Shown piece after piece: positions 20,265-33,964 of a DNA stretch of 64,000 nt. Every line of letters begins with the position of its first letter. The first letter of the stretch is position 1. Location of the stretch: IMG/VR virus record IMGVR_UViG_3300026097_000876, positions 197,807 to 261,806 of that record. One strand, written 5' to 3'. Both the position numbers and the translations under genes were made by a program. The notes under the pieces are model-generated. The model did no database searches. It was not told the DNA's origin and saw only the letters and a program-made list of their open reading frames with translations.

Positions 20265-20267
20265 ATA
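20260..20267 (+). promoter_or_regulatory. T4-type late promoter TATAAATA
   Basis: Exact consensus; the 20-mer 20261-20280 is identical to the reverse complement of 53741-53760. Confidence 0.7.
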
Positions 20268-21210: not shown

Positions 21211-21213
21211 ACG

Positions 21214-21249
21214 TAAATAGTTATACTATAAACTAGGAGTATAACTATG
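21214..21249 (+). promoter_or_regulatory. Late promoter (TAAATA) followed by an RBS-occluding hairpin
   Basis: TAAATA at 21214-21219; perfect 10-bp inverted repeat 21218-21227/21238-21247 with a 10-nt loop; SD AGGAG at 21235-21239; the 3' arm ends on the A of the ATG. Confidence 0.6.
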
Positions 21250-21594
21250 GATGACGCTCTAGAAAAGGCACTTGAATTCTCAAATTTTACAGCAACCTTA
21301 AATAATCAAAAAAGAATACTTCATGAAAAATATACTGAAGAGCTTGGACTTTACTATTGCGGCGGTAAGTTTACAGTAACAAAAGAATTATTAACGTTTT
21401 GTCATTTGCTTTTAAGTAAAGACATTTCAAAAACTGTAGTAATAGACGATAATAATTCTCCTATCCAAATTGATGACATTGATGATTTTATGACAGTGTC
21501 ATTACAACAATACGCAACTGCCGCTAACAAATATTTTGCGCATTATAAAGAACTTAGTACTAAACGGAGTGTTGAAGGTTTAGCAGATGTCTGA
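21247..21594 (+). CDS. Hypothetical protein, possibly a tail-fibre assembly-type helical protein
   Basis: 115 aa with a strong SD; first gene of the coupled operon; function inferred from position only. Confidence 0.45.
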   Translation: MDDALEKALEFSNFTATLNNQKRILHEKYTEELGLYYCGGKFTVTKELLTFCHLLLSKDISKTVVIDDNNSPIQIDDIDDFMTVSLQQYATAANKYFAHYKELSTKRSVEGLADV

Positions 21595-22414
21595 CGGAGT
21601 ATTATGTTTTGCTCATAATAATGGATCTATTGACTATATAAAGCAAGCGGCGTTCTTGGCAAAAAGAGTAAAACAACATTTAGACATACCAGTGTCTGTT
21701 GTTACATCAACACCTGACAAAATTAATAAAAAACACAGTAAACTATTTGATAATATTATTTTTATTGATGATGACAATACAAATTCTAAAAGATATAATG
21801 ACGGACAGAACACACATCAAAATCTTTATTTTAAAAACAACGGAAGAATAAACAGTTACGACCTTACTCCGTATGATAGAACACTAGTTTTAGATACAGA
21901 TTACATTATTTGTAATGATGTTTTTAAAAATGCATTTGGAAATGGTAAATTTCAAATATATAGAGATGGGGTTGATTTATGTAGCTGGCGAAAACATGCA
22001 GAGTTTGATTATATTAACAATAAAGGCATTCCTTTCTATTGGGCAACTTGTTTCTATTTTGAAAAAGATCTAGAAAATAAGATATTTTTTGATACTCTAA
22101 AACAATTACAATCAAATTGGAGCTACTATAGCACAGTTTATGATTTAGGAAGTCGTAATTTTAGAAATGATCATATTTTTAGTATGGGTATTCATATCAT
22201 GAATGGATTTTCAGATAGCCACTGGGCTAAGTTATTACCGGGTAAAATGTTTTACACACTAGATAGAGATAAATTATACAAACTAGACAATGATAAATTA
22301 GTTTTTATGTTAGAAAAAGAAAGTCGAGTTAATGAATATGTTCTGTCTTCGACAGATCGATGTAATGTACATGTAATGAATAAATTTAGCTTGGAGCGTG
22401 TTTTAGATGTCTAA
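21587..22414 (+). CDS. GT-A glycosyltransferase (GT8-like)
   Basis: YDRTLVLDTDYII DxD motif; RNDHIFS. Confidence 0.65.
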   Translation: MSDGVLCFAHNNGSIDYIKQAAFLAKRVKQHLDIPVSVVTSTPDKINKKHSKLFDNIIFIDDDNTNSKRYNDGQNTHQNLYFKNNGRINSYDLTPYDRTLVLDTDYIICNDVFKNAFGNGKFQIYRDGVDLCSWRKHAEFDYINNKGIPFYWATCFYFEKDLENKIFFDTLKQLQSNWSYYSTVYDLGSRNFRNDHIFSMGIHIMNGFSDSHWAKLLPGKMFYTLDRDKLYKLDNDKLVFMLEKESRVNEYVLSSTDRCNVHVMNKFSLERVLDV

Positions 22415-23216
22415 AGGATACGTAATGATGGCTTCGGGTGCCGAATACGTTAAACAAGCATATTTGTGTGCTAAAAGTATTAGAGAAACTCAAACCATCA
22501 ATAATGTGTCATTGCTTACTAATGACACAGTGCCGCAAGAATATAAATCAGTATTCGACAAAATAATTGAAGTCCCTAACAGTCAAACAGATTTTTATCG
22601 TACAGACTTTCGCTGGAAAGTATTTCATATTACTCCGTATGACGAAACAATTGTATTAGACACTGATATGATATTTCTTACTGATGTTAGTCATTGGTGG
22701 AATTATCTCAGAAAATACGATATCTGTTTTACAAAAAACACAAGAACATATCGTAATACTCTGATAACAAACAATTATTATAGAAAGGCATTTGAAGATA
22801 ATTATCTTCCTAATATTTATTGTGCATTTCATTATTTTAAAAAAACTGACATAGCTTTAAATTATTACTTAAAGTTAAAACAAATTTGTAAAAACTATAA
22901 AGAATTTTATAAAATCTATGTTCCGAAACAAACACCTAAACTAAGTAGTATGGACATTAATCATGCCATTACAGTATTGGATCAACAAATAGAAAATTAT
23001 ATTTTTGAACCTGCTAGTTTTGTACACATGAAAAGCAATGTACAAGATTGGAAAAACCCAACAGAAAATTGGACAGATACTATTCCTTTTTATTTTTCAC
23101 AAGATTTTACTCTTAAAGTTGGAAATTATTTACAACACGGAATCTTTCATTATACCGAAAACAGTTTTTGCAACACTATAATACAACAACTAGGAAAACA
23201 AAATGAAGTATATTGA
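22407..23216 (+). CDS. GT-A glycosyltransferase (GT8-like), paralogue
   Basis: YDETIVLDTDMIF DxD motif; FVHMK; HYT. Confidence 0.65.
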   Translation: MSKGYVMMASGAEYVKQAYLCAKSIRETQTINNVSLLTNDTVPQEYKSVFDKIIEVPNSQTDFYRTDFRWKVFHITPYDETIVLDTDMIFLTDVSHWWNYLRKYDICFTKNTRTYRNTLITNNYYRKAFEDNYLPNIYCAFHYFKKTDIALNYYLKLKQICKNYKEFYKIYVPKQTPKLSSMDINHAITVLDQQIENYIFEPASFVHMKSNVQDWKNPTENWTDTIPFYFSQDFTLKVGNYLQHGIFHYTENSFCNTIIQQLGKQNEVY

Positions 23217-23721
23217 AGTACCTACTCCACAATATGTTTGTTATAATAAAAATACTGGAGAAATTTTTAGCATTGGACCTAGCATTGACGATGAATATTC
23301 TTATATTGAAATTGCAGAAGAGCAATCTCAATTATTTAAAAATTTTACAGAAAGAATGGTTGAATGGAAAGTACTGTATAATAAAAGATCTAAAAAATTT
23401 GAACTTCGTAAAGATATAGAAAAAACAGAAAACGAATTTCCTCTTAAAAAAATTACAAAAGCAGTAGATGAATACGCCGATGTTGAATTAATAATTGACA
23501 AACTAAAAAACTTGTGTTACATTAATATTAATGATCTTCCTGTTAACATAGACAAAGAAATAGAGTTTTTTATAACTAAAGAAAACGATCCACATTTTTT
23601 GTATCAATCTTTAAAGTTTAATTTAGGAAGTGCTGATAAAATACATATTGAGATAGCACATACATACAGTGTATATTCTAATAATATGTTTGTAGAGTGT
23701 GCTGTAAAGGAGATAGTTTGA
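23203..23721 (+). CDS. Hypothetical protein
   Basis: 172-aa ORF overlapping both neighbours. Confidence 0.55.
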   Translation: MKYIEVPTPQYVCYNKNTGEIFSIGPSIDDEYSYIEIAEEQSQLFKNFTERMVEWKVLYNKRSKKFELRKDIEKTENEFPLKKITKAVDEYADVELIIDKLKNLCYININDLPVNIDKEIEFFITKENDPHFLYQSLKFNLGSADKIHIEIAHTYSVYSNNMFVECAVKEIV

Positions 23722-24620
23722 AATTAAAAATTGCAGAACAAGACATTATCTATTTGTCGTACGACGAACCAAATGCAGAAAAAAATTATGCAGACTTGTT
23801 ATCTAAGGTTCCGTGGGCAAAACGAATTCACGGAGTCAAAGGTTCAGATGCGGCACATAAAGCCTGTGCAGAAATTAGCGAAACTGACAGATTTATTACT
23901 GTAGACGGTGATAATATTGTTGATCAAAAATTTTTAGATCAAGTCATTGATTTAGATCAACATACTGATTTAAAGAAAAGTGTTATTAGCTGGTGCGGGC
24001 GTAATGTTATTAATGGACTTGTATACGGCAACGGTGGACTTAAATGTTGGCCTAAAGATTATGTTTTAAATATGCGTACACACGAAGCAGCAGATCCTAA
24101 CGATATTAATGCACAAGTTGAATTTTGTTGGGATGCAGAATACATTCAAATGTCTGACTGTTATAGCACAGTACACAACAATGCAAGTCCAAAACAAGCG
24201 TGGCGAGCAGGTTTTCGTGAAGGTGTAAAACTTGCATTAGACCGAGGCGTAAAAGTAGACAAAGAATTATTTTTACAAAGCCATGAAAAAAATTTACATA
24301 TGTTATATATTTGGCTTATGGTAGGATATGATGTTCCGAACGGGCATTTTTCAGTGTATGGTGCCAGAGAAGGACTTATGATGACTATGCTAAGTGATTG
24401 GGATTATGTTCAGGTCCGTGACTTTGATTATTTAGATAGTCATTGGGAGGGTATTAGTAGCATGCCTATGGATGTTCTTTATAGTGAAATTAATAATAAC
24501 GGATTTATGTTAAGAGATGAGTTAGGTATTCCGATTGCACCTGAACCATTATCAGAAGATCAGAGTGAATTTTTTAAAGCAGTTCACCACAGCTTCGGAA
24601 GAGGTAAACATCTTAAATGA
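23718..24620 (+). CDS. Glycosyltransferase-like protein (GT-A)
   Basis: Probable TTG start at 23718 after AAGGAG; FITVDGD DxD; GVKGSDAAHKACA; WRAGFREGVKL. Confidence 0.55.
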   Translation: MKLKIAEQDIIYLSYDEPNAEKNYADLLSKVPWAKRIHGVKGSDAAHKACAEISETDRFITVDGDNIVDQKFLDQVIDLDQHTDLKKSVISWCGRNVINGLVYGNGGLKCWPKDYVLNMRTHEAADPNDINAQVEFCWDAEYIQMSDCYSTVHNNASPKQAWRAGFREGVKLALDRGVKVDKELFLQSHEKNLHMLYIWLMVGYDVPNGHFSVYGAREGLMMTMLSDWDYVQVRDFDYLDSHWEGISSMPMDVLYSEINNNGFMLRDELGIPIAPEPLSEDQSEFFKAVHHSFGRGKHLK

Positions 24621-25951
24621 ATAAAAATGAAGTAAAACAAAAATTAGATTCGGTTGGTTGCGGATTTTGTCTAGCTAAATGGACGCAAGTTACAATTCAT
24701 CTTGGATCCGGAATCAATCATAGTTGTCATCATGTCAGAGCACATGCAATTCCATTAAAAGATCTTGCTGACAATCCTAATGTTTTACACAACACAGGAT
24801 TCAAAAAGAATACCAGAAAGCAAATGCTAAACAACGAACGTCCTGATGAATGTGACTATTGTTGGAGAATCGAAGATAATACAGATAAACTTAGTGACAG
24901 AGTATTAAAAAGTGCAGATTCCTGGTCTTGGCCTGAATACGATATAATTAGTAAATCTTCAGGAGACGAGGATGTTTATCCTAAATATGTAGAAGTCAGT
25001 TTTAGTAATGTGTGTAATTTTAAATGTGGGTATTGCGGACCTGCATTTAGCAGCAAGTGGGCTGAAGAAATTAATCAACATGGTCCGTACACATTTGATA
25101 AAACTAATTGGAAATATAATTTGATTGACGAATATCAACAACAAATTCCTACTAGAGAACATAATCCTTATATTGAAGCATTTTGGAAATGGTTTCCGGA
25201 AGCTGTTGAACACATGCATACCTTTCGAATTACAGGTGGAGAACCATTACTAAGTAAACATACTGACAAAGTTTTACAACATTTATTAGAAAACCCCCAA
25301 CCAGAATTAGAATTTAGTATTAATACTAATGCATGTCCCCCGAATAATTTGTGGAAAGAATTTACTAAAAAAATAAAAGTTTTAGAAGAAAAAAACTGTA
25401 TTAAAAGATTTGTATTATTTGTAAGTGCAGAAGCCAAAGGAAAACAACAAGAATATAACAGACACGGAATGAATTGGCAATTGTTTGTAGATAATGTAGA
25501 ATACTTTCTTGAAAATACTAATGGGCGGCTTAGTTTTATGAGTGCATTTAATATTTTAAGTGTACCAACATTTTTGCCTTTTTTAAAATATGTATCTAGT
25601 CTCAAAGGAAGATTTGATAATGATGTAAATATTGATATTCCATATGTAAGAAATCCTCATTTTCTAGATTGTATGATTGCAACTGAAGAACTTGTACAAA
25701 CATATTTACATCCTTGTCTTAAATTTATGCAAGAAAAAAACTTTGAAGCGTTTGAGATACAAAAATTTGAAAGAATTCTCGAAGATTTAGATGGTCGTTT
25801 TAAAAATCCAGATAAATTTAAACAAATATCAAATGAAGGACGAAGAATGTTTTACGACTGGATTAGAGAACACGATAAGCGTCGAGGAACAAATTTTGAA
25901 AAAACTTTTCCAGAACTGATAACATTTTATAGAGATTGCTTGTATGTATGA
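24617..25951 (+). CDS. Radical SAM protein with N-terminal twitch domain
   Basis: CNFKCGYC core and ITGGEP; N-terminal CLAKW...SCHH...CDYC precedes the core. Confidence 0.85.
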   Translation: MNKNEVKQKLDSVGCGFCLAKWTQVTIHLGSGINHSCHHVRAHAIPLKDLADNPNVLHNTGFKKNTRKQMLNNERPDECDYCWRIEDNTDKLSDRVLKSADSWSWPEYDIISKSSGDEDVYPKYVEVSFSNVCNFKCGYCGPAFSSKWAEEINQHGPYTFDKTNWKYNLIDEYQQQIPTREHNPYIEAFWKWFPEAVEHMHTFRITGGEPLLSKHTDKVLQHLLENPQPELEFSINTNACPPNNLWKEFTKKIKVLEEKNCIKRFVLFVSAEAKGKQQEYNRHGMNWQLFVDNVEYFLENTNGRLSFMSAFNILSVPTFLPFLKYVSSLKGRFDNDVNIDIPYVRNPHFLDCMIATEELVQTYLHPCLKFMQEKNFEAFEIQKFERILEDLDGRFKNPDKFKQISNEGRRMFYDWIREHDKRRGTNFEKTFPELITFYRDCLYV

Positions 25952-26627
25952 TATTGTGTTTATAAGTTATCATGAATCTAATGCAGAACAAAACTTTGAT
26001 AAATTGCATCAAAGATTTAACAATATAGGCGTTTTTGGAGATAGAATAAAACGGGTATCTAATGTTAAGGGAATACATAATGCACATATCGAAGCTGCTA
26101 AGATAGTTAATACAAACTATTTTTATGTAGTCGATGGAGATGCTGATATTGTAAGTGACTTTAAATTTGATTATGAAACTATTGATAGTGATGTAGTACA
26201 TGTATATTCCAGTATTAATCCTATTAATAATCTTGAATACGGCTACGGTGGAGTAAAATTACTACCAACACAACTTACTAAAAATATAGATACTACTACA
26301 CACGATATGACCACAAGTATATCAAAAAAATTTAAAGTTTTAGATGAAATATCAAATATTACAGCATTTAATACAGATGAATTTAGCACTTGGCGTTCGG
26401 CATTTAGAGAATGTGCAAAATTATCGAGTAGAACAATACAAGGACAAATCGATGAAGAAACCGAACAAAGACTCAAAATTTGGACAACCGTGGGACACGA
26501 TAGAGACTTCGGTGAACATGCCATTAACGGTGCTAGGGCCGGTATGGAGTTTGGCCTTTCTAACCAGTCTGATATATCATTAATAAACGATTTTGATTGG
26601 CTAAAAGAGCAATTCAATAATGATTAA
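25944..26627 (+). CDS. Glycosyltransferase-like protein, paralogue of 23718
   Basis: DIVFISYHE.NAE.N; VKGIHNAH; VVDGDA; GYGGVKL; WRSAFRECAKL. Confidence 0.55.
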   Translation: MYDIVFISYHESNAEQNFDKLHQRFNNIGVFGDRIKRVSNVKGIHNAHIEAAKIVNTNYFYVVDGDADIVSDFKFDYETIDSDVVHVYSSINPINNLEYGYGGVKLLPTQLTKNIDTTTHDMTTSISKKFKVLDEISNITAFNTDEFSTWRSAFRECAKLSSRTIQGQIDEETEQRLKIWTTVGHDRDFGEHAINGARAGMEFGLSNQSDISLINDFDWLKEQFNND

Positions 26628-27471
26628 TATCGTTGTTACAAGTAAACCAGTAGATGGACTTCTTTATTATAGTTACGAATACTGTGATATGCTTAACAAA
26701 GCAGGCTATCCTGCTAAGGTTGTTATTATATGTCACCAAAAATTTAGTGTACTAGATTATATGGAAGTCCTAACCACCAAATACACATATGTAGATAATG
26801 TTGTGTATAACAATTTAAATGTAGGCAATGACGATGTAACACTTGTTATGGGCAGGAGTATGATTACACTGTCTTGGATCAATTACAACGATTATACAGA
26901 AGAACAAAAACAAACACTGCATAGTGTATTTGCTAATAAAGTAATAAGTGTGTATTCAGAAAATCATCCTGCACAATATCCGCAGGCAGTAGAGTTTTAT
27001 AGCCCTAAACAAATTGTAGACCTATGCGACACTGAAGTGTATCCTAATGGCGTAGGAGAACACTTTGAAAAAACAATTAATTTTAGTATATATAAACCGC
27101 ACACAGACAACATACAATTTAAACATTTATTTCTAGGAACAAACGACAAATACTACGCAACAGTAGAAAAGGTAATTGACCAATTTCCTGATCACGGGAT
27201 CTTGACATATGACGAAAAGTATGTTAATATTAAAAATAATAACGTATTTGCACCTGTAGGAAATCTAATGGGCATGTTCGAAACATATGTTTACACAAAA
27301 GAAACATTTGATCCGGCTCCTAGAATCTTTCAAGAGTGCAAATATTATGGAAAGGATGTGATTTACTTGAGAGACAAAAACATACAAGACGGCGGCAGTG
27401 TGTACTGGAAACGAGATCTAAAAGAACCAGATGTAACAGCAATCATAAATGCTATAAAGGAATTTAAATGA
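26620..27471 (+). CDS. Hypothetical protein (possibly a divergent GT-B fold)
   Basis: 283-aa coupled ORF; the C-terminal PRIFQECKYYGKDV is only weakly GT-B-like. Confidence 0.4.
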   Translation: MINIVVTSKPVDGLLYYSYEYCDMLNKAGYPAKVVIICHQKFSVLDYMEVLTTKYTYVDNVVYNNLNVGNDDVTLVMGRSMITLSWINYNDYTEEQKQTLHSVFANKVISVYSENHPAQYPQAVEFYSPKQIVDLCDTEVYPNGVGEHFEKTINFSIYKPHTDNIQFKHLFLGTNDKYYATVEKVIDQFPDHGILTYDEKYVNIKNNNVFAPVGNLMGMFETYVYTKETFDPAPRIFQECKYYGKDVIYLRDKNIQDGGSVYWKRDLKEPDVTAIINAIKEFK

Positions 27472-27827
27472 AAATTGATCCAAAATGTCTAAAATTTAAT
27501 ACCCCAAAAAATAAAGGTGCGGCATATACTTCTGATGGATTTATGCTGCCCTGCTGTTGGATAGACGATCCGCCAGTTTATAGATATCTTGTAGAAATGG
27601 GTATGAAAGATCCGGAATTAGCATTAGAAAATAACGATTGCTTAGAAGACATTTTTACATCAGATCAATGGGAGAACTTCTTCCAAAAATTATACGATGA
27701 TCCTGATCGGTGTTCATATATGTGTAAGAAAAAATGCGGCGTTGAACTTACCGACGGCGAAACTGAAATTCGTAAAGTAGAAGAAAGACTAGAGGTTTTA
27801 AAACAAAGTGAAGGAAAGAATTACTGA
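27468..27827 (+). CDS. Stand-alone SPASM/twitch-like Fe-S protein
   Basis: DGFMLPCCW...CSYMCKKKC in 119 aa, directly upstream of a radical SAM gene. Confidence 0.65.
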   Translation: MKIDPKCLKFNTPKNKGAAYTSDGFMLPCCWIDDPPVYRYLVEMGMKDPELALENNDCLEDIFTSDQWENFFQKLYDDPDRCSYMCKKKCGVELTDGETEIRKVEERLEVLKQSEGKNY

Positions 27828-28551
27828 TACCTATGTAAAATATCAGAAAAATTGCAGGATTAATGTCGATACCTCGCATCGTTGTCCCTTTCGGTGCCCT
27901 CAGTGCGTGAGACAAAAGACAATAAGCCAAGATATGATACGTAGAAGTTTTGATTTGGAAGAACATAACTTTCAAAAAATATTAGATTATTACGATAATG
28001 GTCCTACATTTTGTGGACAAATTTCTGACCCTATCTATCATCCTAGATTTTTAAATTTTTTAAAAATGTGCAATGGACGAAATAGAGCTGTTCGTATTGC
28101 CACAGTAGGTAGTGGTAAAAGCGACGAGTGGTGGGACGAGGCTTATAGCTATGGTCTTGGAGAAAATCAGTGGACTTTCGGAGTAGACGGTATAGACGAA
28201 AAGAGCGAACTGTATCGCGTTGGTAGTAATTTCAAAGATCAATGGCGTCGAATGCAACAGGGTAGAGATCTAGGACATGTAATTGTTTGGCAGTATATTA
28301 TATTTGGTTATAATGAACACGAAATAGATCAGGCAGTAGAAATTGCAAAGAAAGAAGATTTTACTCTGCTTTTTGTTAACACAAACAGGGGATTTAATCC
28401 AGAAAGTGATACCCTGAGAAAGAATGTTAATTTTAAAATAAACAGTCCCGATCCAAAGCATCTTACTGATCGTCTTAAGAAAGAATGGTATGCTCATACC
28501 ACAGATGTATTTCAGGCCTGGCGTGATCTTCCTCCTTGGAGTCCGAAATGA
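27808..28551 (+). CDS. Radical SAM protein (core only)
   Basis: CPFRCPQC; FCGQISDP; FGVDG; WQYIIF.YNEH. Confidence 0.85.
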   Translation: MKERITDTYVKYQKNCRINVDTSHRCPFRCPQCVRQKTISQDMIRRSFDLEEHNFQKILDYYDNGPTFCGQISDPIYHPRFLNFLKMCNGRNRAVRIATVGSGKSDEWWDEAYSYGLGENQWTFGVDGIDEKSELYRVGSNFKDQWRRMQQGRDLGHVIVWQYIIFGYNEHEIDQAVEIAKKEDFTLLFVNTNRGFNPESDTLRKNVNFKINSPDPKHLTDRLKKEWYAHTTDVFQAWRDLPPWSPK

Positions 28552-29117
28552 AAAGTAAAAAGAATAGCCTAGTTAAATGTGAGCATTATCCAACATTATT
28601 TTATGATACGCAATCTGATACTTTTGTAAAGTATTATAGTGATCGAGCTCCTTTTGAAAAATGGTGGAGTGTTTATAGAGAGTATCAAAATTTTGAACAT
28701 AGAACTGTGCAGGTTTTAGACGTAAATTTCAAAAAGAAATACTTTGTAATGGAGTCAATAAAAGGTATTAATCTTGAGCACGAGATGATTAAACTAGATT
28801 TTGAGGATACAAAGAAAGTTCTGACACAGACTTTAGAAATTTTTAGTAATAAATTTAGTTTTGCATGCGAAGCTATGCATGACACAGAGATATTTTTCCA
28901 TAAAGACTTTCGAACTGAAAATCTCATGTTTGACGAAAATAAAAATGTGAGACTAGTAGACCCTGATAGTTTCAGTGTTTTGCCACTTGATAGAATGAAT
29001 AATTTATTGTTTTTTGGAAGGTACATGGATACTCTTACATCCATTCGAGAACGCCTTAGTTTTGCAGAGCTTACCGAAGAGCAAAAATATCGATTAGGAA
29101 GAGGATATTTATACTAA
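28548..29117 (+). CDS. Protein kinase-like/APH-fold kinase
   Basis: Catalytic loop HKDFRTEN and LVDPD; ATG at 28548 gives an ATGA overlap. Confidence 0.6.
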   Translation: MKSKKNSLVKCEHYPTLFYDTQSDTFVKYYSDRAPFEKWWSVYREYQNFEHRTVQVLDVNFKKKYFVMESIKGINLEHEMIKLDFEDTKKVLTQTLEIFSNKFSFACEAMHDTEIFFHKDFRTENLMFDENKNVRLVDPDSFSVLPLDRMNNLLFFGRYMDTLTSIRERLSFAELTEEQKYRLGRGYLY

Positions 29118-30190
29118 TGATTTCTTATGACGGCTGGGATAAGGAGTATCAAGAAAATCGAGAAGAATACTTGGAAGTGTTTGATCGTTTTATGAGTCAA
29201 ATGAATTACGAAAATAATGAAGACTGGGAGCGTAGTTTTGCAGAACGTGTAGGTCGTAAACATTGTGTTAGTGTTGCTAGTGCCACAGATGCACTACACT
29301 TTACGCTATTAGCACACGGTATTGGTACAGACGACGAAGTACTAGTAACAGACTTTAGTTGGATTAGTAGTTCAGCTTGCGTAAGTATGGTAGGTGCCAC
29401 TCCAGTATTTTGCGACATTGACTTAGATACATATCATATGAGCTTAGACAGCATACAGCGCATGTACAGCAGTAAGACTAAGGCAATTGTATATGTACAC
29501 CTATTTGGTAACATGACTGACACAAGCGCAATACAAGCGTTCTGTGCAGAAAAAAATATACTGTTTATCGAAGATGCTGCACAGAGTTTAGGTAGTAGTC
29601 TCAACGGTGTTAGAGCAGGCACTATTGGCGATTGCAGTGTGTACAGTTTTAACTCAAACAAAGTTATTGCAGGCATCAACGGCGGCGGCGTTGTGTTAAC
29701 CGACAACGAAGATATTGCAAAACGTGTAAAGCAGATTCGCAGACACGGCAAAGACAAAACATTCGACACGCTAGGCTACAACAGTCGCATGTATGTGCTT
29801 AATGCAGAAATTATTAATCTGCGATTACAACGTGCAGAAGAAAATCAATCAAAGCGTCAAGATATTGCAAAACGTTACAACGAAGCATTTGCAGAGTTGT
29901 CTGTAGTAACACAAGCAATGTCAAACGGATTAAATCACAACTATCACAAATACGTAGTAAGATTCAAAGACAAGGACACTAGAAAGCGTGTTAAAGACGC
30001 CTTAAATGCTAGTATACACTACGAGACTCCGTTGAGTGCTAACGGTATGTACGACACACTACAGTGCAGGAGAGACGCTTGTACAGCGTCTGTGACGGCA
30101 TCTAATACTGTTTTATCGTTGCCGATACACGCTTGGTTAACTGAGGATGAAATAAGTAATATTATCAAACTAGTTAAGGATAACATATGA
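29117..30190 (+). CDS. DegT/DnrJ/EryC1/StrS PLP-dependent sugar aminotransferase
   Basis: SATDALH; GATPVFCDID; IEDAAQS; SFNSNK (PLP lysine); GYNSRM; LSLPIH. Confidence 0.9.
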   Translation: MISYDGWDKEYQENREEYLEVFDRFMSQMNYENNEDWERSFAERVGRKHCVSVASATDALHFTLLAHGIGTDDEVLVTDFSWISSSACVSMVGATPVFCDIDLDTYHMSLDSIQRMYSSKTKAIVYVHLFGNMTDTSAIQAFCAEKNILFIEDAAQSLGSSLNGVRAGTIGDCSVYSFNSNKVIAGINGGGVVLTDNEDIAKRVKQIRRHGKDKTFDTLGYNSRMYVLNAEIINLRLQRAEENQSKRQDIAKRYNEAFAELSVVTQAMSNGLNHNYHKYVVRFKDKDTRKRVKDALNASIHYETPLSANGMYDTLQCRRDACTASVTASNTVLSLPIHAWLTEDEISNIIKLVKDNI

Positions 30191-30906
30191 TAGAAGAATT
30201 ATTTGGTAAAAGAAAACATGTTGTACATTATGATACAGAAATTATTCCTACACGATCCGAAGTAGAAGAAATACTAAGAGTAGGGTATTCTCTAGCAACA
30301 TCCAAACAGAAGGCTTATGCCTATAAGTTTTGGATATTAGGACCAAATAAAGAACGCAGTCACATGTTATGGGAAATGGCTGAAGGTAGGAAAATTGATG
30401 TGGATTACGAAGCATACGGTACTACTACAAAAGATAAAAAATATGTTGCTAATCCCGCTTTGTTCCATCTAAAAAGTTCTCCGTGGACTTTTTTGGTTAC
30501 TCCGAGAACTTCGTCCCCTAATCCGCATTTTAAGTATGCATTTGAAACTGCTGGCAGTAAATGGCAGTTAGAAGACAGGGACTTTGTTAATACAAAAAAC
30601 AGAGAATCAAATGCCATAGATGTAGGAATGGTGGCAAAAACAATCAGCGGAGCCGCATTTGAAAAAGGTTGGGATGTATCATACAATATCTGTTTTGAAA
30701 ACGACAAAACAAAATGGCCAAAGTGTCTTCCATTCATTAGTGACCATGCTACAGGTTTTAGGCCTGTAATGATGATGACCTTAGGAAAAGGAAAAAAATA
30801 TTATTATGAAAGATTGATTAGTGACGGCACAATCGCAAATGATCCTAAATATAATGCAGATCCTCCTTTTGAAACTATTTTCGAATTTTTTGACGAGAAC
30901 AAATGA
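30187..30906 (+). CDS. Nitroreductase-fold protein 1
   Basis: KRKHV..YD; ATSKQKAYAYKFWILGP; IDVGM; MMMTLGK. Confidence 0.6.
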   Translation: MIEELFGKRKHVVHYDTEIIPTRSEVEEILRVGYSLATSKQKAYAYKFWILGPNKERSHMLWEMAEGRKIDVDYEAYGTTTKDKKYVANPALFHLKSSPWTFLVTPRTSSPNPHFKYAFETAGSKWQLEDRDFVNTKNRESNAIDVGMVAKTISGAAFEKGWDVSYNICFENDKTKWPKCLPFISDHATGFRPVMMMTLGKGKKYYYERLISDGTIANDPKYNADPPFETIFEFFDENK

Positions 30907-31592
30907 TGGAAAATTATAAGTATGTTTTAGAGTATGATAATTCTGCATTTATTGATCCTACTCATATTGATAATGCATTAGAATATGCTTGGAAGGTAAC
31001 TCCGTCAAAACAAAATTTTATGCCTTATAAGGTGCATGTTCTCTCACCCGAAGCTGAAGGGCATAAACAAATTTTATACAACAAAGCACTCATTCAACAA
31101 GCGCGAGGATCAGGAATTAAGATAAAAAATTCTAAAGCCTTGCAAAAATATGATCAGCGATTAAAGAATGATGACATGCAACCTTTTTTTCGTAATTTAA
31201 AAACAGCTCCGTATGTTTTTATATTTGCACAGCGGGTTGAAGACGAACCTAATCCATTCCAGCAACATAATATCAATTATGGATTAACATATTGTCAAAC
31301 AGAGAATAGCGACCCCGGACATGCACACGGTAAAGATATTGCAAGAATTGAAATAGGCATGTTCAGTGCAAATCTTGCATCGCATTTGTTAACTAATAAG
31401 ATAGATGTTTCTTTTACACAGTGTTTTCCTGGTGAGCTTGACACTTGGACTGAAAAAGAATTTAAATTTTTAAAAGATGACGTTCTTTTAATTATGACGG
31501 CAGGCAAAGGCAAAATATATAGAAGAGATCTTAAATCACAAGAAAAAGATCTAAAACCAAATTTTAAAAGAATAGTAAACAAGGAAGTATAA
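30903..31592 (+). CDS. Nitroreductase-fold protein 2
   Basis: AWKVTPSKQNFMPYKVHV; IEIGMF; LIMTAGK. Confidence 0.7.
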   Translation: MMENYKYVLEYDNSAFIDPTHIDNALEYAWKVTPSKQNFMPYKVHVLSPEAEGHKQILYNKALIQQARGSGIKIKNSKALQKYDQRLKNDDMQPFFRNLKTAPYVFIFAQRVEDEPNPFQQHNINYGLTYCQTENSDPGHAHGKDIARIEIGMFSANLASHLLTNKIDVSFTQCFPGELDTWTEKEFKFLKDDVLLIMTAGKGKIYRRDLKSQEKDLKPNFKRIVNKEV

Positions 31593-32272
31593 TGATTAAA
31601 AAGATTTTAGACAAATGGAAATATGTTCTTGCATTCGATACTGAACACAGAACAGACAAAACTGTTATTAAAGACATAATGCATACAGCTTGGCAGACAA
31701 CGCCGAGCAAAAACAGTTTCATGCCTTATAGAGTTCATGTATTTGGCCCAGGAGAAGAAAAGTCAAAAAGAATAATATATGAAACAAGTGCCGCAAAAGA
31801 GAAAAATTCAAACAGCAGAAATTCGAACCCCGATCAATGGGAAGTTAATTCAAATAAAGCAAGTTTATTAACAGCTGAATATATCCTGGTATTCACTCCG
31901 AGAGCAGAAGATAATCCTAGTCCTTGGCAAATTCATCTACACAACGGCGGGTGCTACATGGATGCATGGTACGAAGACAAATTAAAAAAATATAGGGCAA
32001 CAATTTTAGTAGAAGTTGGGTTATTTGCACAAGCAGTCTCTACATTGTGTTTAGAACAAGGTCTGCATACTAACTACATTTCATCATTTGAATCAGATTT
32101 AGAATACTGGAAAGATCTTGACTTTATAAAGCATCCACCTTGTCTAATTATGGGAATAGGTAAGGCTAAGTATTTTCGTAGAGAATGGATGAAAAAAATC
32201 GGATGGGACGAAGGTGATCATAAACCGAGCTTCAGCAGTGTAGTTAATTTCCATGGAATTGATACCGAATGA
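31592..32272 (+). CDS. Nitroreductase-fold protein 3
   Basis: AWQTTPSKNSFMPYRVHV; VEVGLF; LIMGIGK. Confidence 0.7.
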   Translation: MIKKILDKWKYVLAFDTEHRTDKTVIKDIMHTAWQTTPSKNSFMPYRVHVFGPGEEKSKRIIYETSAAKEKNSNSRNSNPDQWEVNSNKASLLTAEYILVFTPRAEDNPSPWQIHLHNGGCYMDAWYEDKLKKYRATILVEVGLFAQAVSTLCLEQGLHTNYISSFESDLEYWKDLDFIKHPPCLIMGIGKAKYFRREWMKKIGWDEGDHKPSFSSVVNFHGIDTE

Positions 32273-32907
32273 TGTCAACCGATCAAATGGAAAATAATTT
32301 TTTTAACCGAACTGAAGTAAATGTGGATATTGCATATAGATGTGCTCTTGACTGTCCGAGATGTCAACGTTGGAGGGTCTATAGAAAGCATAACAAGAAA
32401 GTTCCAGGTTATGACATGACCATGACTGAGTTTAAAAGAATTGTCTCACACTTTACTGAAGTTAGTTTTTGCGGACAGTATTCTGATCCAATTCATCATC
32501 CGAAATTTATTGATTTTCTAAAACTATGCAAGGATAAAGGTATAAAAGCATCTGTGCATAATGCATCATCTGCTAAATCAGAAGATTGGTATATTCAAGC
32601 ATTTAAAGCAAATCCCAATGCTCAATGGTTTTTTGGAATAGACGGGTTGCCTCATCAGAGCCATCAGTATAGAATTAATCAAGATGGCGTAAAACTTTAT
32701 AATATTATGCTAGAAGCAAAAAAGTATTTAAAAACAAAACCAATATGGCAGTACATCATTTTTAATTACAATGAAAATCATGTCGAAGAAGCTAAAAAAA
32801 TGGCTGACGACGACGACGTCTATTTTATGTTAGTAAGATCTTCTAGGTGGGACCGAGACGATCCATTAATGCCTACTCTTAAAGAATATAAGTTAAATAG
32901 ATTATGA
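32269..32907 (+). CDS. Radical SAM protein (core only), paralogue of 27808
   Basis: CALDCPRC; FCGQYSDP; FGIDG; WQYIIFNYNE. Confidence 0.85.
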   Translation: MMSTDQMENNFFNRTEVNVDIAYRCALDCPRCQRWRVYRKHNKKVPGYDMTMTEFKRIVSHFTEVSFCGQYSDPIHHPKFIDFLKLCKDKGIKASVHNASSAKSEDWYIQAFKANPNAQWFFGIDGLPHQSHQYRINQDGVKLYNIMLEAKKYLKTKPIWQYIIFNYNENHVEEAKKMADDDDVYFMLVRSSRWDRDDPLMPTLKEYKLNRL

Positions 32908-33239
32908 CTGTAGAATTAAAACCAAAATGTTTTGAAGATCAGCAGATGGCTGTAACTAATAGAGGTCATTTAATACCTTGTTGTTATTGCGATACTCAGC
33001 ATACTATGAATGATTTAGAATTTCAAAAACTATTGAAAGTTAGCAAAATAAGCGACTATAACAGTATAGAAGAAATTTTGAATACAAACGAATGGAAAGA
33101 GTTTTATAAAAATCTGCAACAAAATATTGGGCCTCGTGCTTGTCAGACTGTCTGTGCTAAAAATAAAAAAGACCCGTTAAATATTAAAGAAATAGAAGAC
33201 GGTCGAACAGGAAAAATTATACATACTAGAATTGCATAG
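32904..33239 (+). CDS. Stand-alone SPASM/twitch-like Fe-S protein
   Basis: RGHLIPCCYC...ACQTVC in 111 aa, directly downstream of a radical SAM gene. Confidence 0.65.
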   Translation: MTVELKPKCFEDQQMAVTNRGHLIPCCYCDTQHTMNDLEFQKLLKVSKISDYNSIEEILNTNEWKEFYKNLQQNIGPRACQTVCAKNKKDPLNIKEIEDGRTGKIIHTRIA

Positions 33240-33258
33240 CAACATATGGAAGATTAAA

Positions 33259-33930
33259 ATGTTAGAAGAGTTAATGCTGAAAAGGCAACAAGTAAGATTT
33301 TTTGATAGAGAAAACTATCCTAGCGAAAAAATAATTTACTCAATCTTAGAAAAAACTTATCAAATAGTTCCATCTAAACAAAATTTAGTGCCTTACAAAG
33401 TCCATGTGTTAGGTCCAAGCATGGAAGAACATAAAAGAGAGTTATATCTTTTATCTTCTAAACAACAGCTAGGTGACAAGTTAAATTATAACGAACTTGC
33501 CAAACGTAATAGCGGAAATACACAGTTGTTGGCTCCTTATGTTCTACTTTTTGAAAAAAGATTACCAGAACCTAACGATTTTGTAAAAAAAGAAATGCTC
33601 CTAGGACATAAATTTAATGAATGTTTGCCCGAACAACAAAGAAATCAAAGGATAGCTACAGCTATCGAGGTGGGTATGTTTACAGCAATGCTATCTGGGT
33701 TTTGTATGGAGGAAGATATTTCTCTAAGTTATATAGGATGCCTTCCTGGAAACCCAGAAACCTACAAAAATAATCCTTCTGTCAATTTTGATTTTATCGA
33801 ACAACACATTTTTTTAGGGATAGGCATAGGTTACCAAGACTATTCTATCGAAGAAAATCTTAGATTATCTCGTTTACAAAATTGTGGAGAGATAAAACCT
33901 AAAAGTGATAATGTAATTGTTAAACATTAA
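33259..33930 (+). CDS. Nitroreductase-fold protein 4
   Basis: KRQQVRFFD; PSKQNLVPYKVHVLGP; IEVGMF; GIGIG. The ATG at 33259 is preferred over the TTG at 33232. Confidence 0.7.
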   Translation: MLEELMLKRQQVRFFDRENYPSEKIIYSILEKTYQIVPSKQNLVPYKVHVLGPSMEEHKRELYLLSSKQQLGDKLNYNELAKRNSGNTQLLAPYVLLFEKRLPEPNDFVKKEMLLGHKFNECLPEQQRNQRIATAIEVGMFTAMLSGFCMEEDISLSYIGCLPGNPETYKNNPSVNFDFIEQHIFLGIGIGYQDYSIEENLRLSRLQNCGEIKPKSDNVIVKH

Positions 33931-33935: not shown

Positions 33936-33964
33936 TTGACAATTCATATTAATTAGTGTATAAT
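33936..33964 (+). promoter_or_regulatory. Consensus sigma70 promoter TTGACA-N17-TATAAT
   Basis: -35 at 33936-33941, -10 at 33959-33964; SD AGGA before the ATG at 33993. Confidence 0.85.

What the first reader, a model, noticed from the sequence alone, without database searches (positions are those of the whole stretch)
21247..33930. Tail-adjacent, translationally coupled 18-gene operon of glycosyltransferases, radical SAM and flavin enzymes: a candidate virion-decoration pathway
Seen: from 21247 to 33239 every gene overlaps the next, and the last follows within 20 nt; the chain starts at a late promoter right after the tail genes. It holds 4 GT-A-like proteins, 3 radical SAM enzymes, 2 free SPASM proteins, a kinase, a DegT aminotransferase and 4 nitroreductase folds. 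Established: some large viruses glycosylate their own virions. Inference: late timing and position favour assembly of an unusual glycan on fibres or capsid rather than DNA modification; I know of no described product for this combination.
Basis: partly seen in the sequence, partly recalled or inferred. Interest (0 to 1): 0.8.

Follow-up and report, generated by a model that had tools for sequence, protein, structure and literature searches.

The report
Tail-fibre-linked sugar-transferase and radical-SAM gene module
An uncultured jumbo phage carries, directly after its tail-fibre genes, a tightly packed chain of 21 soluble sugar-building enzymes whose first half accompanies those fibre genes in every relative examined, so it most likely decorates the fibres with an unusual sugar coat, although the target is unproven and the claimed late promoter is not there.

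Summary
The gene chain is real. There are 17 consecutive overlaps from 21247 to 33930. After one 62-nt gap, three more coupled genes run to 36891, giving 21 genes rather than 18.

- two GT8-like and two GT2-like GT-A proteins
- three radical SAM enzymes
- two free twitch/SPASM proteins
- a DegT aminotransferase
- four nitroreductase paralogues
- a weak kinase-like protein

I add a GT-B-fold protein, a fourth radical SAM, an O-carbamoyltransferase and a methyltransferase-like protein.

The chain has two parts. The core (g01-g07) followed the fibre genes in 54 of 54 relatives with room to judge, and also in the cultured Ralstonia phage RsoM2USA. The distal half is a swappable cassette region.

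There is no late promoter before the chain. TATAAATA sits before the fibre genes. Half of the relatives have a sigma-70-type promoter before g01, and the chain's only gap holds a perfect one.

No protein in the chain is membrane-bound.

Best reading (about 0.4): cytoplasmic glycosylation of the phage's own fibres. Host-envelope, DNA and small-molecule targets are not excluded.

The parts
14831..16912 (+). u2, tail fibre with Phage Tail Collar domain; its N-terminal domain is shared with u3 and u4
   Evidence: Pfam PF07484 1.7e-13; PHROG tail and tail-fibre families
16912..18744 (+). u3, fibre paralogue with the shared N-terminal domain
   Evidence: phrog_15511 and phrog_14394 on residues 3-85; sequence
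18740..18747 (+). TATAAATA late-type promoter motif 34 nt before the u4 start
   Evidence: ATAAATA lies upstream of u4 in 87 of 93 distinct relatives
18774..20264 (+). u4, fibre paralogue; weak match to an intramolecular-chaperone (Peptidase_G2) domain at the C-terminus
   Evidence: E = 0.0019, below cut-off
20260..20267 (+). TATAAATA late-type promoter motif 36 nt before the u5 start
20296..21210 (+). u5, Ser/Thr/Asn-rich fibre-associated protein; duplicated in some relatives; C-terminal part similar to RsoM2USA ORF355
   Evidence: 3e-12
21247..21594 (+). g01, 115 aa, first gene of the chain; a virus-only family with a structural lead to DUF4376/Caudo_TAP tail-fibre assembly proteins
   Evidence: Atlas TM 0.63-0.70, feature score 0.90; not confirmed by Pfam on 24 members; conserved in 49 of 80 and in nearly all u5-derived loci
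21587..22414 (+). g02, GT8-like GT-A glycosyltransferase (DxD at D103/D105, invariant H262)
   Evidence: hhalign to the g03 family 99.6%, 5e-25; invariant columns
22407..23216 (+). g03, GT8-like GT-A glycosyltransferase (DxD at D85/D87, invariant H207)
   Evidence: family profile vs glycogenin 8.5e-8; invariant columns
23203..23721 (+). g04, 172 aa, virus-only protein of unknown fold; the most variable member of the core
   Evidence: no family hit; Atlas gave nothing usable; homologues in 26 of 80 loci
23697..24620 (+). g05, GT2-like GT-A domain plus a C-terminal helical domain; the best-conserved enzyme of the core
   Evidence: model pLDDT 88.5; fold hits ThuS/SunS, WrtF, TarP and BcsA at about 1e-4; viral GTs including Che8; Atlas
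24617..25951 (+). g06, radical SAM enzyme with an N-terminal twitch domain (NF033640 family)
   Evidence: NCBIfam 310 bits against a cut-off of 170; invariant C133/C137/C140 and C18/C37/C79/C82
25944..26627 (+). g07, shorter paralogue of g05 (GT-A)
   Evidence: blastp 2.8e-24; joint alignment A3
26620..27471 (+). g08, GT-B-fold protein (glycosyltransferase or NDP-sugar epimerase type); first gene of the variable half
   Evidence: model pLDDT 73; fold hits PimA 2.5e-5, T4 AGT, WaaC and UDP-GlcNAc 2-epimerases
27468..27827 (+). g09, free Cys-rich twitch/SPASM-like protein paired with g10
   Evidence: paralogue of g17, 1.8e-7; no Pfam hit of its own
27808..28551 (+). g10, radical SAM core without its own auxiliary domain
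   Evidence: Pfam 27.3 bits; phrog_21308 3e-18; CX3CX2C motif
28536..29117 (+). g11, small protein-kinase-fold protein (Bud32/Kdo-kinase-like); weak and rare
   Evidence: Pkinase 3.4e-5, below cut-off; NCBIfam weak hits; homologues in 3 of 80 loci, two of them the window's own sequence, plus L050 and L169
29117..30190 (+). g12, DegT/DnrJ/EryC1 PLP-dependent sugar aminotransferase
   Evidence: Pfam 1.7e-86; PDB hits scyllo-inositol transaminase 2.5e-62, QdtB, WbpE and perosamine synthetase
30187..30906 (+). g13, nitroreductase-fold flavoprotein paralogue
30903..31592 (+). g14, nitroreductase-fold paralogue
31592..32272 (+). g15, nitroreductase-fold paralogue
   Evidence: Pfam 25.9 bits, above cut-off
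32269..32907 (+). g16, radical SAM core, paralogue of g10
   Evidence: blastp 7e-37; CX3CX2C motif
32904..33239 (+). g17, free SPASM/twitch protein paired with g16, in the opposite order to g09-g10
   Evidence: Pfam SPASM 24.5 bits against a cut-off of 21.5; matches the N-terminal twitch of NF033640
33232..33930 (+). g18, nitroreductase-fold paralogue (an alternative ATG start lies at 33259)
33936..33964 (+). Perfect sigma-70-type promoter (TTGACA, 17 nt, TATAAT) in the chain's only intergenic gap
   Evidence: the only 12/12 match in 18000-37500
33993..34829 (+). g19, fourth radical SAM enzyme; 78-87% identical across relatives, so part of a recently spread cassette
   Evidence: Pfam 31.6 bits
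34826..36289 (+). g20, NodU/CmcH/TobZ-type O-carbamoyltransferase
   Evidence: Pfam 6.6e-67 and 3e-20; PDB hits GdmN 9e-50, NovN and TobZ
36286..36891 (+). g21, class I methyltransferase-like protein and last gene of the chain; in many relatives it directly follows g07
   Evidence: weak NCBIfam hits; synteny

Best explanation
This is a two-part, entirely soluble carbohydrate pathway attached to a particular family of tail-fibre genes.

THE TWO PARTS.
- The conserved core is g01 to g07, often with the methyltransferase-like g21. It comprises a possible fibre-assembly helper (g01), two GT8-like transferases, two GT2-like transferases and an N-twitch radical SAM enzyme.
- The variable half comprises the GT-B-fold g08, the DegT aminotransferase g12, the radical SAM enzymes g10, g16 and g19 with their free twitch partners, four nitroreductase-fold flavoproteins, the O-carbamoyltransferase g20 and g21. 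It supplies and tailors an unusual aminated, carbamoylated and possibly methylated sugar.

PROPOSED MECHANISM.
- The core uses host nucleotide sugars to glycosylate the phage's own fibre proteins (u2-u5) in the cytoplasm, before or during fibre assembly.
- The variable half is exchanged as cassettes between phages, so that the glycan differs from phage to phage.

SHOWN HERE: the folds and families, the paralogies, the synteny, the promoter pattern and the absence of membrane proteins.

INFERRED: that the acceptor is a fibre protein, the order of reactions, and what the radical SAM and flavin enzymes do chemically.

My confidence that this is a glycan-building pathway is about 0.85. My confidence in the full statement, with the virion fibre as acceptor, is 0.4.
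For: 1. Enzyme content. Five glycosyltransferase folds, a sugar aminotransferase and an O-carbamoyltransferase whose solved relatives carbamoylate hydroxyls of natural products (TobZ on the aminoglycoside tobramycin; GdmN and NovN).
2. Cellular context of the radical SAM family. Homologues of g06, found mostly in Bdellovibrionota genomes, have a GT1 or GT2 gene within 6 kb in 28 of 55 loci of at least 12 kb, and a carbamoyltransferase in 12 of 55. One example reads GT1, carbamoyltransferase, GT1, DegT, N-twitch rSAM, second rSAM.
3. Linkage to the fibres. 54 of 54 loci found with u5 as query and having room downstream carry g01-g03 and g05, at u5 identities of 31-79%. The order fibre-like gene, g01, g02, g03, slot, g05, g06, g07, g21 recurs in the soil phage RsoM2USA at 25-51% identity.
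4. Orthologous transferases are kept across phages from marine, freshwater and soil samples. That fits a conserved phage-encoded acceptor better than host surface glycans, which differ between hosts (inference).
5. g01, which overlaps g02 by 8 nt, resembles tail-fibre assembly proteins by structure and language-model features (a lead only).
6. No protein in the chain has a convincing membrane segment: the maximum 19-residue hydropathy is 1.76. There is therefore no flippase, polymerase, ligase or GT-C.
7. A separate QueE-like and GTP cyclohydrolase I gene set sits among replication-type genes on the other strand.
8. In RsoM2USA, proteins encoded just upstream of the module were found in virions by mass spectrometry (PMC8504454).
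Against: - No glycan has been seen on any fibre of this lineage.
- The promoter before the core is of sigma-70 (early) type in 51 of 98 relatives. It is never the late type that precedes the fibre genes. The enzymes are therefore not simply co-regulated with the fibres.
- Conserved synteny within one lineage can be inherited without any functional coupling.
- g06 is missing from some relatives that keep g05, g07 and g21, so the radical SAM step is not essential to the core.
- The resemblance of g05 to peptide glycosyltransferases (SunS/ThuS) has TM-scores of only 0.3-0.38.
- The g01 lead failed a Pfam test.
- The published reading of similar genes in pelagimyophages is host O-chain modification (PMC7029224).
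- Phage GT-A enzymes that glycosylate DNA are known and can sit near structural genes (bioRxiv 10.1101/2023.12.21.572611).
Confidence: 0.4

Rival explanations
1. Host-surface remodelling. The transferases act early in infection on host lipopolysaccharide core, O-antigen or capsule intermediates at the cytoplasmic face of the membrane. This masks or destroys the receptor that the neighbouring fibres recognise, blocking superinfection and stopping progeny from being trapped on debris. The enzymes stay linked to the fibres because enzyme and fibre must match the same glycan.
For: - Sigma-70-type promoters precede the core in 51 of 98 relatives and precede g19 in the window.
- GT8 enzymes include lipopolysaccharide core transferases, which are peripheral proteins without membrane segments (established knowledge).
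- This is the published proposal for GT8 genes in the same type of island in pelagimyophages (PMC7029224).
- Cellular homologues of g06 sit in GT-rich loci that look like surface-polysaccharide clusters.
Against: - The same four orthologous transferases are kept in phages from very different environments, including a Ralstonia phage. Host surface glycans are far more variable than that.
- There is no flippase, bactoprenol transferase, polymerase or ligase in the chain.
- Remodelling an existing outer-membrane surface within one lytic cycle is slow (inference).
Confidence: 0.2
2. DNA hypermodification. The transferases add sugars to a hydroxymethylated or otherwise activated base in phage DNA. 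The aminotransferase, carbamoyltransferase, radical SAM and flavin enzymes then tailor that sugar or base, protecting the genome from host nucleases.
For: - An early-type promoter.
- Soluble enzymes.
- The best TM-scores for g08 include T4 alpha-glucosyltransferase, at 0.44-0.47.
- TarP, named as a structural relative of phage DNA GT-A enzymes, is among the g05 hits.
- Such clusters can lie next to structural genes.
- RsoM2USA encodes two thymidylate-synthase-family genes and a dCMP deaminase (PMC8504454).
Against: - No cytosine methyltransferase, TET-like dioxygenase or thymidylate-synthase homologue was found in the Pfam-scanned stretch from 14220 to about 46600.
- g21 lacks the motifs of DNA methyltransferases (read from the sequence).
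- The chain is placed directly behind fibre genes and a fibre-assembly-like gene.
- A separate 7-deazaguanine-type gene set lies elsewhere in the window.
- Radical SAM/twitch pairs and nitroreductase paralogues were not mentioned in the DNA-glycosylation study I read.
Confidence: 0.12
3. A diffusible small molecule. The distal half (DegT aminotransferase, radical SAM enzymes, O-carbamoyltransferase, GT-B protein, kinase-fold protein, flavoproteins) makes an aminoglycoside-like or pseudo-oligosaccharide compound. This compound acts on the host or on competing phages and is not attached to any macromolecule.
For: - The best solved relative of g12 is annotated as a scyllo-inositol transaminase, at 2.5e-62.
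- The relatives of g20 are TobZ, NovN and GdmN, all antibiotic-tailoring enzymes.
- A cyanophage paper calls a similar trio 'antibiotic synthesis genes' (PMC12801897).
- The cassette is mobile, is more conserved than the core (g19 78-87%), and has its own perfect promoter.
Against: - No cyclitol or sugar-cyclase family was named among the hits for the chain.
- No exporter is present. The nearby ABC system has a solute-binding protein, so it is an importer.
- This reading does not explain the four conserved transferases tied to the fibres.
- The same enzyme families are ordinary in surface-glycan pathways.
Confidence: 0.1

Closest known systems
Virion glycosylation of mycobacteriophages (Che8, Corndog, Myrna; Freeman et al. 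2023, as cited in PMC12619734)
   Same: Phage-encoded GT-A glycosyltransferases lie beside structural genes and act on the phage's own virion proteins in the cytoplasm. A Che8 glycosyltransferase is among the fold matches of g05 (6e-4).
   Different: In the mycobacteriophages, one or two transferases modify the capsid and tail tube of siphoviruses of Gram-positive-type hosts. Here there are five GT folds plus radical SAM, flavin, aminotransferase and carbamoyltransferase enzymes beside the fibres of a jumbo myovirus. No glycan has yet been observed here.
'Host recognition cluster' island of pelagimyophages and cyanomyophages (PMC7029224)
   Same: An island among the tail-fibre genes holds GT8 glycosyltransferases and radical SAM cassettes that differ between close relatives. 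Part of the distal cassette (g08, g16, g17, g12, g19, g20, g21) occurs in Pelagibacter phage Mosig at 45-59% identity.
   Different: The core g01-g07 is absent from all cultured cyanophages and pelagiphages in the collection I searched. In this lineage the core is invariant rather than hypervariable. The authors of that paper proposed host O-chain modification.
Ralstonia jumbo phage RsoM2USA ORF354-ORF347 (MG752970)
   Same: The order and coupling are the same: fibre-like gene, then g01, g02, g03, a slot, g05, g06, g07 and g21 homologues at 25-51% identity.
   Different: All of these genes are annotated as hypothetical and none has been studied. I detected no distal aminotransferase or carbamoyltransferase cassette in the 25 kb examined.
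Phage DNA sugar-hypermodification clusters (bioRxiv 10.1101/2023.12.21.572611)
   Same: Several phage GT-A and GT-B enzymes, related to lipopolysaccharide and teichoic-acid enzymes, are sometimes found near structural genes.
   Different: Those clusters are defined by an adjacent cytosine methyltransferase plus dioxygenase, or by a thymidylate-synthase homologue. None was found in the Pfam-scanned stretch from 14220 to about 46600.
Surface-glycan-type loci of Bdellovibrionota that carry NF033640 radical SAM genes
   Same: The same radical SAM family (about 40% identity) stands next to GT1/GT2 transferases, a DegT aminotransferase and a carbamoyltransferase. In one Bdellovibrio isolate it also stands next to a 1965-aa fibre-like protein with a Peptidase_S74 chaperone domain.
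   Different: These are cellular loci of unknown product. Fibre adjacency was seen in only about 2 of 78 loci.

Membership tests
T4-type late operon | TATAAATA (or ATAAATA) late promoter about 30 nt upstream of the first gene | tested here: not met
   There is none before 21247. ATAAATA lies before g01 in 3 of 98 relatives, against 87 of 93 for u4 and 44 of 45 for u1.
NF033640 twitch-domain radical SAM (g06) | NCBIfam score above the curated cut-off; CX3CX2C motif plus N-terminal auxiliary cysteines | tested here: met
   310 bits against a cut-off of 170. C133/C137/C140 and C18/C37/C79/C82 are invariant in 17 sequences.
GT8 glycosyltransferases (g02, g03) | GT-A fold with DxD and a downstream metal-binding His; significant similarity to known GT8 members | tested here: met
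   g03 family profile vs glycogenin 8.5e-8 over residues 3-102. g02 matches the g03 family at 99.6%. DxD and His are invariant. Neither protein reaches any Pfam model, so they are distant members.
GT2-like GT-A transferases (g05, g07) | GT-A Rossmann-like fold with a DxD motif | tested here: met
   A confident model. All top PDB and viral fold matches are GT-A enzymes. D70-G-D72 is nearly invariant. There is no sequence-level family hit.
Phage virion glycosylation system | Glycan chemically detected on virion proteins and dependent on the phage transferases | not testable with these tools
   Requires glycoproteomics. Only gene position and conservation could be tested.
Phage seroconversion / O-antigen modification (gtrABC type) | Membrane flippase, bactoprenol-linked transferase and an integral-membrane serotype-specific transferase | tested here: not met
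   No protein from g01 to g21 has a convincing transmembrane segment. No such family was hit.
DNA sugar-hypermodification cluster | Transferase adjacent to a C5-cytosine methyltransferase plus 5-methylpyrimidine dioxygenase, or to a thymidylate-synthase-like hydroxymethylase | tested here: not met
   None was found in the scanned stretch from 14220 to about 46600. The remaining roughly 200 kb of the contig could not be read.
Radical SAM/SPASM peptide-maturation (RiPP) cluster | Precursor peptide gene, peptide-recognition (RRE/PqqD-like) domain, and a protease or exporter | tested here: not met
   There are no gaps for a small precursor gene. No RRE, protease or exporter family was hit. Peptide-maturase models score far below their cut-offs.
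DegT/DnrJ/EryC1 sugar aminotransferases (g12) | Pfam PF01041 above the cut-off over its full length | tested here: met
   291 bits against a cut-off of 19.8, covering profile positions 7-359 of 360. No equivalog (PseC, LegC, ArnB, DesI) reaches its cut-off, so the substrate is unassigned.
NodU/CmcH/TobZ O-carbamoyltransferases (g20) | Both the Carbam_trans_N and Carbam_trans_C domains | tested here: met
   73 and 225 bits, both above their cut-offs. PDB hits GdmN, NovN and TobZ at 1e-41 to 1e-49.
Tail-fibre assembly proteins (DUF4376/Caudo_TAP) for g01 | Significant sequence or profile match to the family | tested here: inconclusive
   Structure TM 0.63-0.70 and feature score 0.90. However, none of 24 family members hits these Pfam models even at E = 1.

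The most novel reading that the evidence does not exclude
The fibres of this jumbo-phage lineage carry a radical-SAM-tailored glycan, or direct radical-SAM modifications, and this modification is itself part of what the fibre binds. Exchanging enzyme cassettes in the variable half (radical SAM arrays, or the aminotransferase, carbamoyltransferase and methyltransferase sets) would then re-programme host recognition or virion survival without changing the fibre sequence. Host range would be partly written by enzymes.
Probability: 0.12. Interest if true: 0.9.

Novelty: new variant of a known kind. Interest (0 to 1): 0.62.

Why it matters
Virion glycosylation by phage-encoded enzymes has so far been demonstrated only for a few mycobacteriophages. 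In this window, a much larger enzyme set accompanies the tail-fibre genes of a widespread, almost wholly uncultured lineage of large aquatic and soil phages. It includes a radical SAM family of unknown chemistry, with relatives of its radical SAM gene in 336 IMG/VR stretches and relatives of the fibre-side gene in at least 498.

If the fibres are the target, this would be the first case of glycan-decorated receptor-binding organelles in phages of Gram-negative hosts. It would also point to cassette exchange of sugar-tailoring enzymes as a way to diversify them.

The question becomes directly testable because one cultured phage, RsoM2USA, carries the core, where every gene is still annotated as hypothetical.

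Whatever the target turns out to be, the work assigns folds to six previously unannotated families. It also shows that the enzyme operon and the fibre genes use different promoter classes.

Tried and rejected
- Near-identity DNA search of phage records found only a 440-bp match to Pelagibacter phage Mosig. I first took the phage for a Kyanoviridae member. I dropped that because the core genes are absent from all cultured cyano- and pelagiphages and present only in RsoM2USA.
- Profile searches of PDB sequences with the g02, g05/g07 and g08 families gave nothing usable. Structure prediction was needed instead.
I rebuilt the alignment without that row.
- No RNA run was listed for the region, and the only DNA run is probably the source sample. 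I therefore did not use read laying, and expression timing rests on promoter motifs alone.
- I tested whether cellular homologues of g06 generally sit beside fibre-like proteins, as one does in one Bdellovibrio isolate. An iterative search found this in only about 2 of 78 loci, so I rejected it as a general rule.
- The tail-fibre-assembly reading of g01 was not confirmed by Pfam, even at E = 1 on 24 members.
- g04 remained without any lead.
- The conserved hairpin before g01 showed almost no covariation, so I cannot tell whether it is a structure or a sequence motif.
- A possible link to the 'moraphage' lineage, which has four core glycosyltransferase orthogroups (PMC12619734), could not be checked. 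The paper names no shared identifiers.
- The Cell Reports version of the DNA-glycosylation paper was not held. I read the preprint instead.

Full report
WHAT IS THERE

The window matches IMG/VR contig IMGVR_UViG_3300026097_000876 (261,806 bp) at 100%, so it comes from an uncultured jumbo phage of about 34% G+C.

The left end holds a 4694-aa virion structural protein (115-14199; phrog_10938, 3.8e-96). It is followed by u1 (14220), by three fibre paralogues with a shared N-terminal domain (u2 14831, u3 16912, u4 18774) and by u5 (20296). u2 has a Phage Tail Collar domain (1.7e-13) and many tail-fibre PHROG hits. 'Tail-adjacent' is therefore correct.

From 21247 onward, 18 same-strand ORFs overlap each successor by 1-25 nt. 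After a single 62-nt gap, three more coupled genes follow, ending at 36891. The unit is therefore 21 genes. I call them g01-g21.

The structural genes upstream are separated by gaps of 20-36 nt that carry promoter motifs, whereas the enzyme chain has 17 consecutive overlaps. The packing is a real feature of this block.

WHAT THE GENES ARE

Glycosyltransferase folds:
- g02 and g03 are paralogues (hhalign 99.6%). The g03 family profile matches glycogenin (GT8) at 8.5e-8. Both keep the DxD motif and a downstream invariant His.
- g05 and g07 are paralogues (2.8e-24). The g05 model is confident (pLDDT 88.5). It is a GT-A domain with a C-terminal helical domain.
- The best solved matches of g05 are the glycocin S-glycosyltransferases ThuS and SunS, then WrtF, TarP and cellulose synthase. 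E-values are near 1e-4 but TM-scores are only 0.3-0.38. Its viral matches are glycosyltransferases, including one from mycobacteriophage Che8.
- g08 (model pLDDT 73) has a GT-B fold. Its matches include PimA at 2.5e-5, T4 alpha-glucosyltransferase, WaaC and UDP-GlcNAc 2-epimerases.

Radical SAM enzymes and their partners:
- g06 belongs to NCBIfam NF033640, radical SAM enzymes with an N-terminal twitch domain (310 bits against a cut-off of 170).
- g10 and g16 are paralogous radical SAM cores (7e-37).
- g09 and g17 are paralogous small Cys-rich proteins (1.8e-7). g17 passes the Pfam SPASM cut-off and matches the N-terminal twitch of NF033640.
- These are therefore split versions of the g06 architecture, once in the fused order (g09-g10) and once permuted (g16-g17). 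The split is conserved in relatives.
- g19 is a fourth radical SAM enzyme.

Other enzymes:
- g12 is a DegT aminotransferase (1.7e-86). Its solved relatives are sugar or inosose aminotransferases, but it reaches no equivalog cut-off.
- g13, g14, g15 and g18 are mutually related (E < 1e-13). Their joint profile hits solved nitroreductases (5.9e-5).
- g20 is an O-carbamoyltransferase of the TobZ/GdmN/NovN type.
- g21 is methyltransferase-like, on weak evidence.
- g11 is a weak kinase-fold protein. It had homologues in only 3 of the first 80 relative loci, two of which are the window's own sequence; two further relatives carry one (L050; L169).

Unassigned proteins:
- g01 resembles tail-fibre assembly proteins (DUF4376/Caudo_TAP) in predicted structure (TM 0.63-0.70). 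A Pfam test on 24 family members did not confirm this.
- g04 is unexplained.

No protein of the chain has a convincing membrane segment.

TWO PARTS WITH DIFFERENT HISTORIES

I took 80 IMG/VR loci found with g06 as the query. Homologues of g05 and g07 were present in 68 of them, g02 and g03 in 54, and g01 in 49. In contrast, g08-g20 were each present in only 3-35.

The order maps show a constant block u2-u3-u4-u5-g01-g02-g03-(g04)-g05-g06-g07. Highly variable content follows it:
- often g21 plus arrays of up to six or seven radical SAM paralogues
- otherwise sets such as g08-g12-g19-g20-g21, in either orientation

To test the linkage from the other side, I searched with the fibre-side gene u5. 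All 54 loci with at least 5 kb downstream carry the core, at u5 identities of 31-79%. Some of them lack g06 but keep g05-g07-g21, so the radical SAM step is common but not universal.

Among 50,697 phage records, only Ralstonia jumbo phage RsoM2USA has the core. There, a fibre-like gene (ORF355) has an N-terminus like u2-u4 and a C-terminus like u5. It is followed by homologues of g01, g02, g03, a slot, g05, g06, g07 and g21 at 25-51% identity, all annotated as hypothetical. Proteins encoded just upstream were detected in RsoM2USA virions by mass spectrometry (PMC8504454).

The distal cassette behaves as mobile:
- g19 is 78-87% identical across relatives, higher than the core.
- The cassette occurs in both orientations.
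- Part of it is present in Pelagibacter phage Mosig.

PROMOTERS

- On the + strand, TATAAATA occurs only at 18740 and 20260, before u4 and u5.
- The 36-nt spacer before g01 has at best 6 of 8 matches.
- Across all distinct upstream regions in the relatives, ATAAATA precedes u1 in 44 of 45, u4 in 87 of 93 and u5 in 30 of 79, but g01 in only 3 of 98.
- A sigma-70-type TTGACA-N16-18-TATA(A/C)T precedes g01 in 51 of 98 (41 by the strict pattern). It never precedes u1-u4, g02-g06 or g08-g18 (first seen).
- The window's own subclade has lost the -35 element. It keeps only a TATACT inside a conserved inverted repeat.
- The only gap in the chain (33931-33992) holds the single perfect 12/12 sigma-70 consensus of the 19.5 kb scanned. 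No + strand terminator-like site lies between the fibre genes and g01; the only + strand site in the region falls inside g20 at 35090.

In T4-type regulation, sigma-70 promoters are early and TATAAATA promoters are late (established knowledge). My reading is as follows. In this window, g01-g18 are probably transcribed by read-through from the fibre late promoters, and g19-g21 also from their own early-type promoter. Lineage-wide, however, the enzyme operon has its own early-type promoter. Late timing therefore cannot be used as an argument. No RNA data could be found.

CONTEXT IN CELLS

Genome homologues of g06 (about 40% identity) come overwhelmingly from Bdellovibrionota.
- In 28 of 55 loci of at least 12 kb, a GT1 or GT2 gene lies within 6 kb. 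In 12 of 55 a carbamoyltransferase does.
- One Bacteriovoracaceae locus reads GT1, x, x, carbamoyltransferase, GT1, DegT, N-twitch rSAM, second N-SPASM rSAM.
- In Bdellovibrio sp. HCB2-146, the gene lies 2 kb from a 1965-aa protein with a Peptidase_S74 fibre-chaperone domain and among four GT2 genes. Such fibre adjacency is not general, occurring in about 2 of 78 loci.

This ties the radical SAM family to carbohydrate pathways rather than to peptide maturation.

WHAT IT MOST LIKELY DOES

I regard the carbohydrate nature of the pathway as well supported (about 0.85). For the acceptor, I favour the phage's own fibre proteins (0.4), for these reasons:
- The linkage of orthologous transferases to the fibre genes is invariant from marine phages to a Ralstonia phage.
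- The first gene of the chain is fibre-assembly-like.
- All the enzymes are soluble.
- QueE-like and GTP cyclohydrolase I genes are placed among replication-type genes elsewhere in the window.

Rival acceptors:
- Host envelope glycans (0.2). This is the published proposal for similar islands (PMC7029224), and it fits the early-type promoters.
- DNA (0.12). Phage GT-A and GT-B enzymes do glycosylate DNA and can lie near structural genes. RsoM2USA has two thymidylate-synthase-family genes.
- A free aminoglycoside-like compound made by the distal cassette (0.1).

A RiPP-type peptide pathway is unlikely. There is no room for a precursor gene, and there is no recognition domain, protease or exporter.

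The enzyme-rich island continues after 36891.
- On the opposite, convergent strand lie an ATP-grasp enzyme, a B12-binding radical SAM enzyme and a complete ABC importer.
- On the + strand follow a PP-loop/NAD-synthase-like protein, a GNAT acetyltransferase, a second B12-binding radical SAM enzyme and a 2OG-Fe(II) oxygenase, up to about 46.6 kb.

VERDICT

The promoter claim is wrong. The virion-decoration idea is the best-supported hypothesis but remains unproven. It is a new variant of a known kind (phage-encoded glycosylation), and it can now be tested in a cultured phage.

Noticed in passing
window 115-14199 (+): A single 4694-aa ORF. Its first 1000 residues match phrog_10938, 'virion structural protein', at 3.8e-96. 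A protein of more than 288 kDa at the equivalent position in RsoM2USA (ORF361) was found in virions.
   Followed up: partly
window 33936-33964 (+): A perfect TTGACA-17-TATAAT lies exactly in the only intergenic gap of the 21-gene chain. It is the only 12/12 match in 19.5 kb.
   Followed up: yes
window 21215-21246 (+); same position in L003-L026: A conserved inverted repeat (AGTTATACT ... AGTATAACT) brackets the Shine-Dalgarno sequence of g01 and contains the -10-like TATACT. It is nearly invariant in the window's subclade, with almost no covariation. It could be an RNA hairpin, an operator or just a conserved sequence. AT-rich palindromes also overlap the -10 in the sigma-70-bearing relatives.
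   Followed up: partly
window 36878-46567: The enzyme island continues. On the minus strand lie an ATP-grasp enzyme (36878-38125), a B12-binding radical SAM enzyme (38115-39569) and an ABC importer with two permeases, an ATPase and an SBP_bac_8 binding protein (39562-43036). On the + strand follow a PP-loop/NAD-synthase-like protein (43168), a GNAT (44019), a second B12-binding radical SAM enzyme (44465) and a 2OG-Fe(II) oxygenase (45965).
   Followed up: partly
window 56079-56978 (-) and 58222-58908 (-): A QueE-like radical SAM gene (phrog_2076, 3e-52) and a GTP cyclohydrolase I gene (1.9e-38) lie among exonuclease, ATPase and HNH genes. This is a 7-deazaguanine-type precursor pathway. I did not determine whether it serves DNA or tRNA, and I identified no DpdA, QueC or QueD.
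   Followed up: partly
L073, L074 (viral); L122, L142, L158 (Bdellovibrionota): Tandem arrays of five to eight NF033640-type radical SAM paralogues occur, in phages and in predatory bacteria alike. Their chemistry and the reason for the multiplicity are unknown.
   Followed up: no
L082-L159 (genome contigs): Cellular homologues of g06 are concentrated in Bdellovibrionota (Bdellovibrio, Bacteriovorax, Halobacteriovorax, Pseudobdellovibrio). A few short MAG contigs (for example L082, Crocinitomicaceae, with g05-g06-g07-g21 at 58-65% identity) look like phage fragments binned with bacteria.
   Followed up: partly
L099 1971-7868 (Bdellovibrio sp. HCB2-146): A 1965-aa protein with a C-terminal Peptidase_S74 'chaperone of endosialidase' domain (5.8e-17), a phage-fibre hallmark, lies 2 kb from the g06 homologue. 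It is surrounded by four GT2 genes and a second N-SPASM radical SAM gene.
   Followed up: partly
window 33993-36891; L001 (Mosig) 18.3-25.6 kb; L016, L019, L021, L035, L044: The g12/g19/g20/g21 cassette is more conserved than the core (g19 78-87% identity). It occurs in both orientations and is shared with Pelagibacter phage Mosig at 54-59% identity. It therefore looks like a recently exchanged mobile cassette.
   Followed up: partly
window 22001-24000: G+C falls to 0.29 over g02-g04, against 0.33-0.39 in the neighbouring 2-kb bins.
   Followed up: no
window 14220-14831 (+): u1 (203 aa, phrog_11259, unknown function) is by far the most conserved gene of the block, at 62-94% identity where the fibres are 30-50%. 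ATAAATA lies upstream of it in 44 of 45 relatives.
   Followed up: no
window 24617-25951 (run X1): The only public run listed as holding this sequence is labelled 'soil metagenome', although most related contigs come from aquatic samples. It may be the source sample.
   Followed up: no
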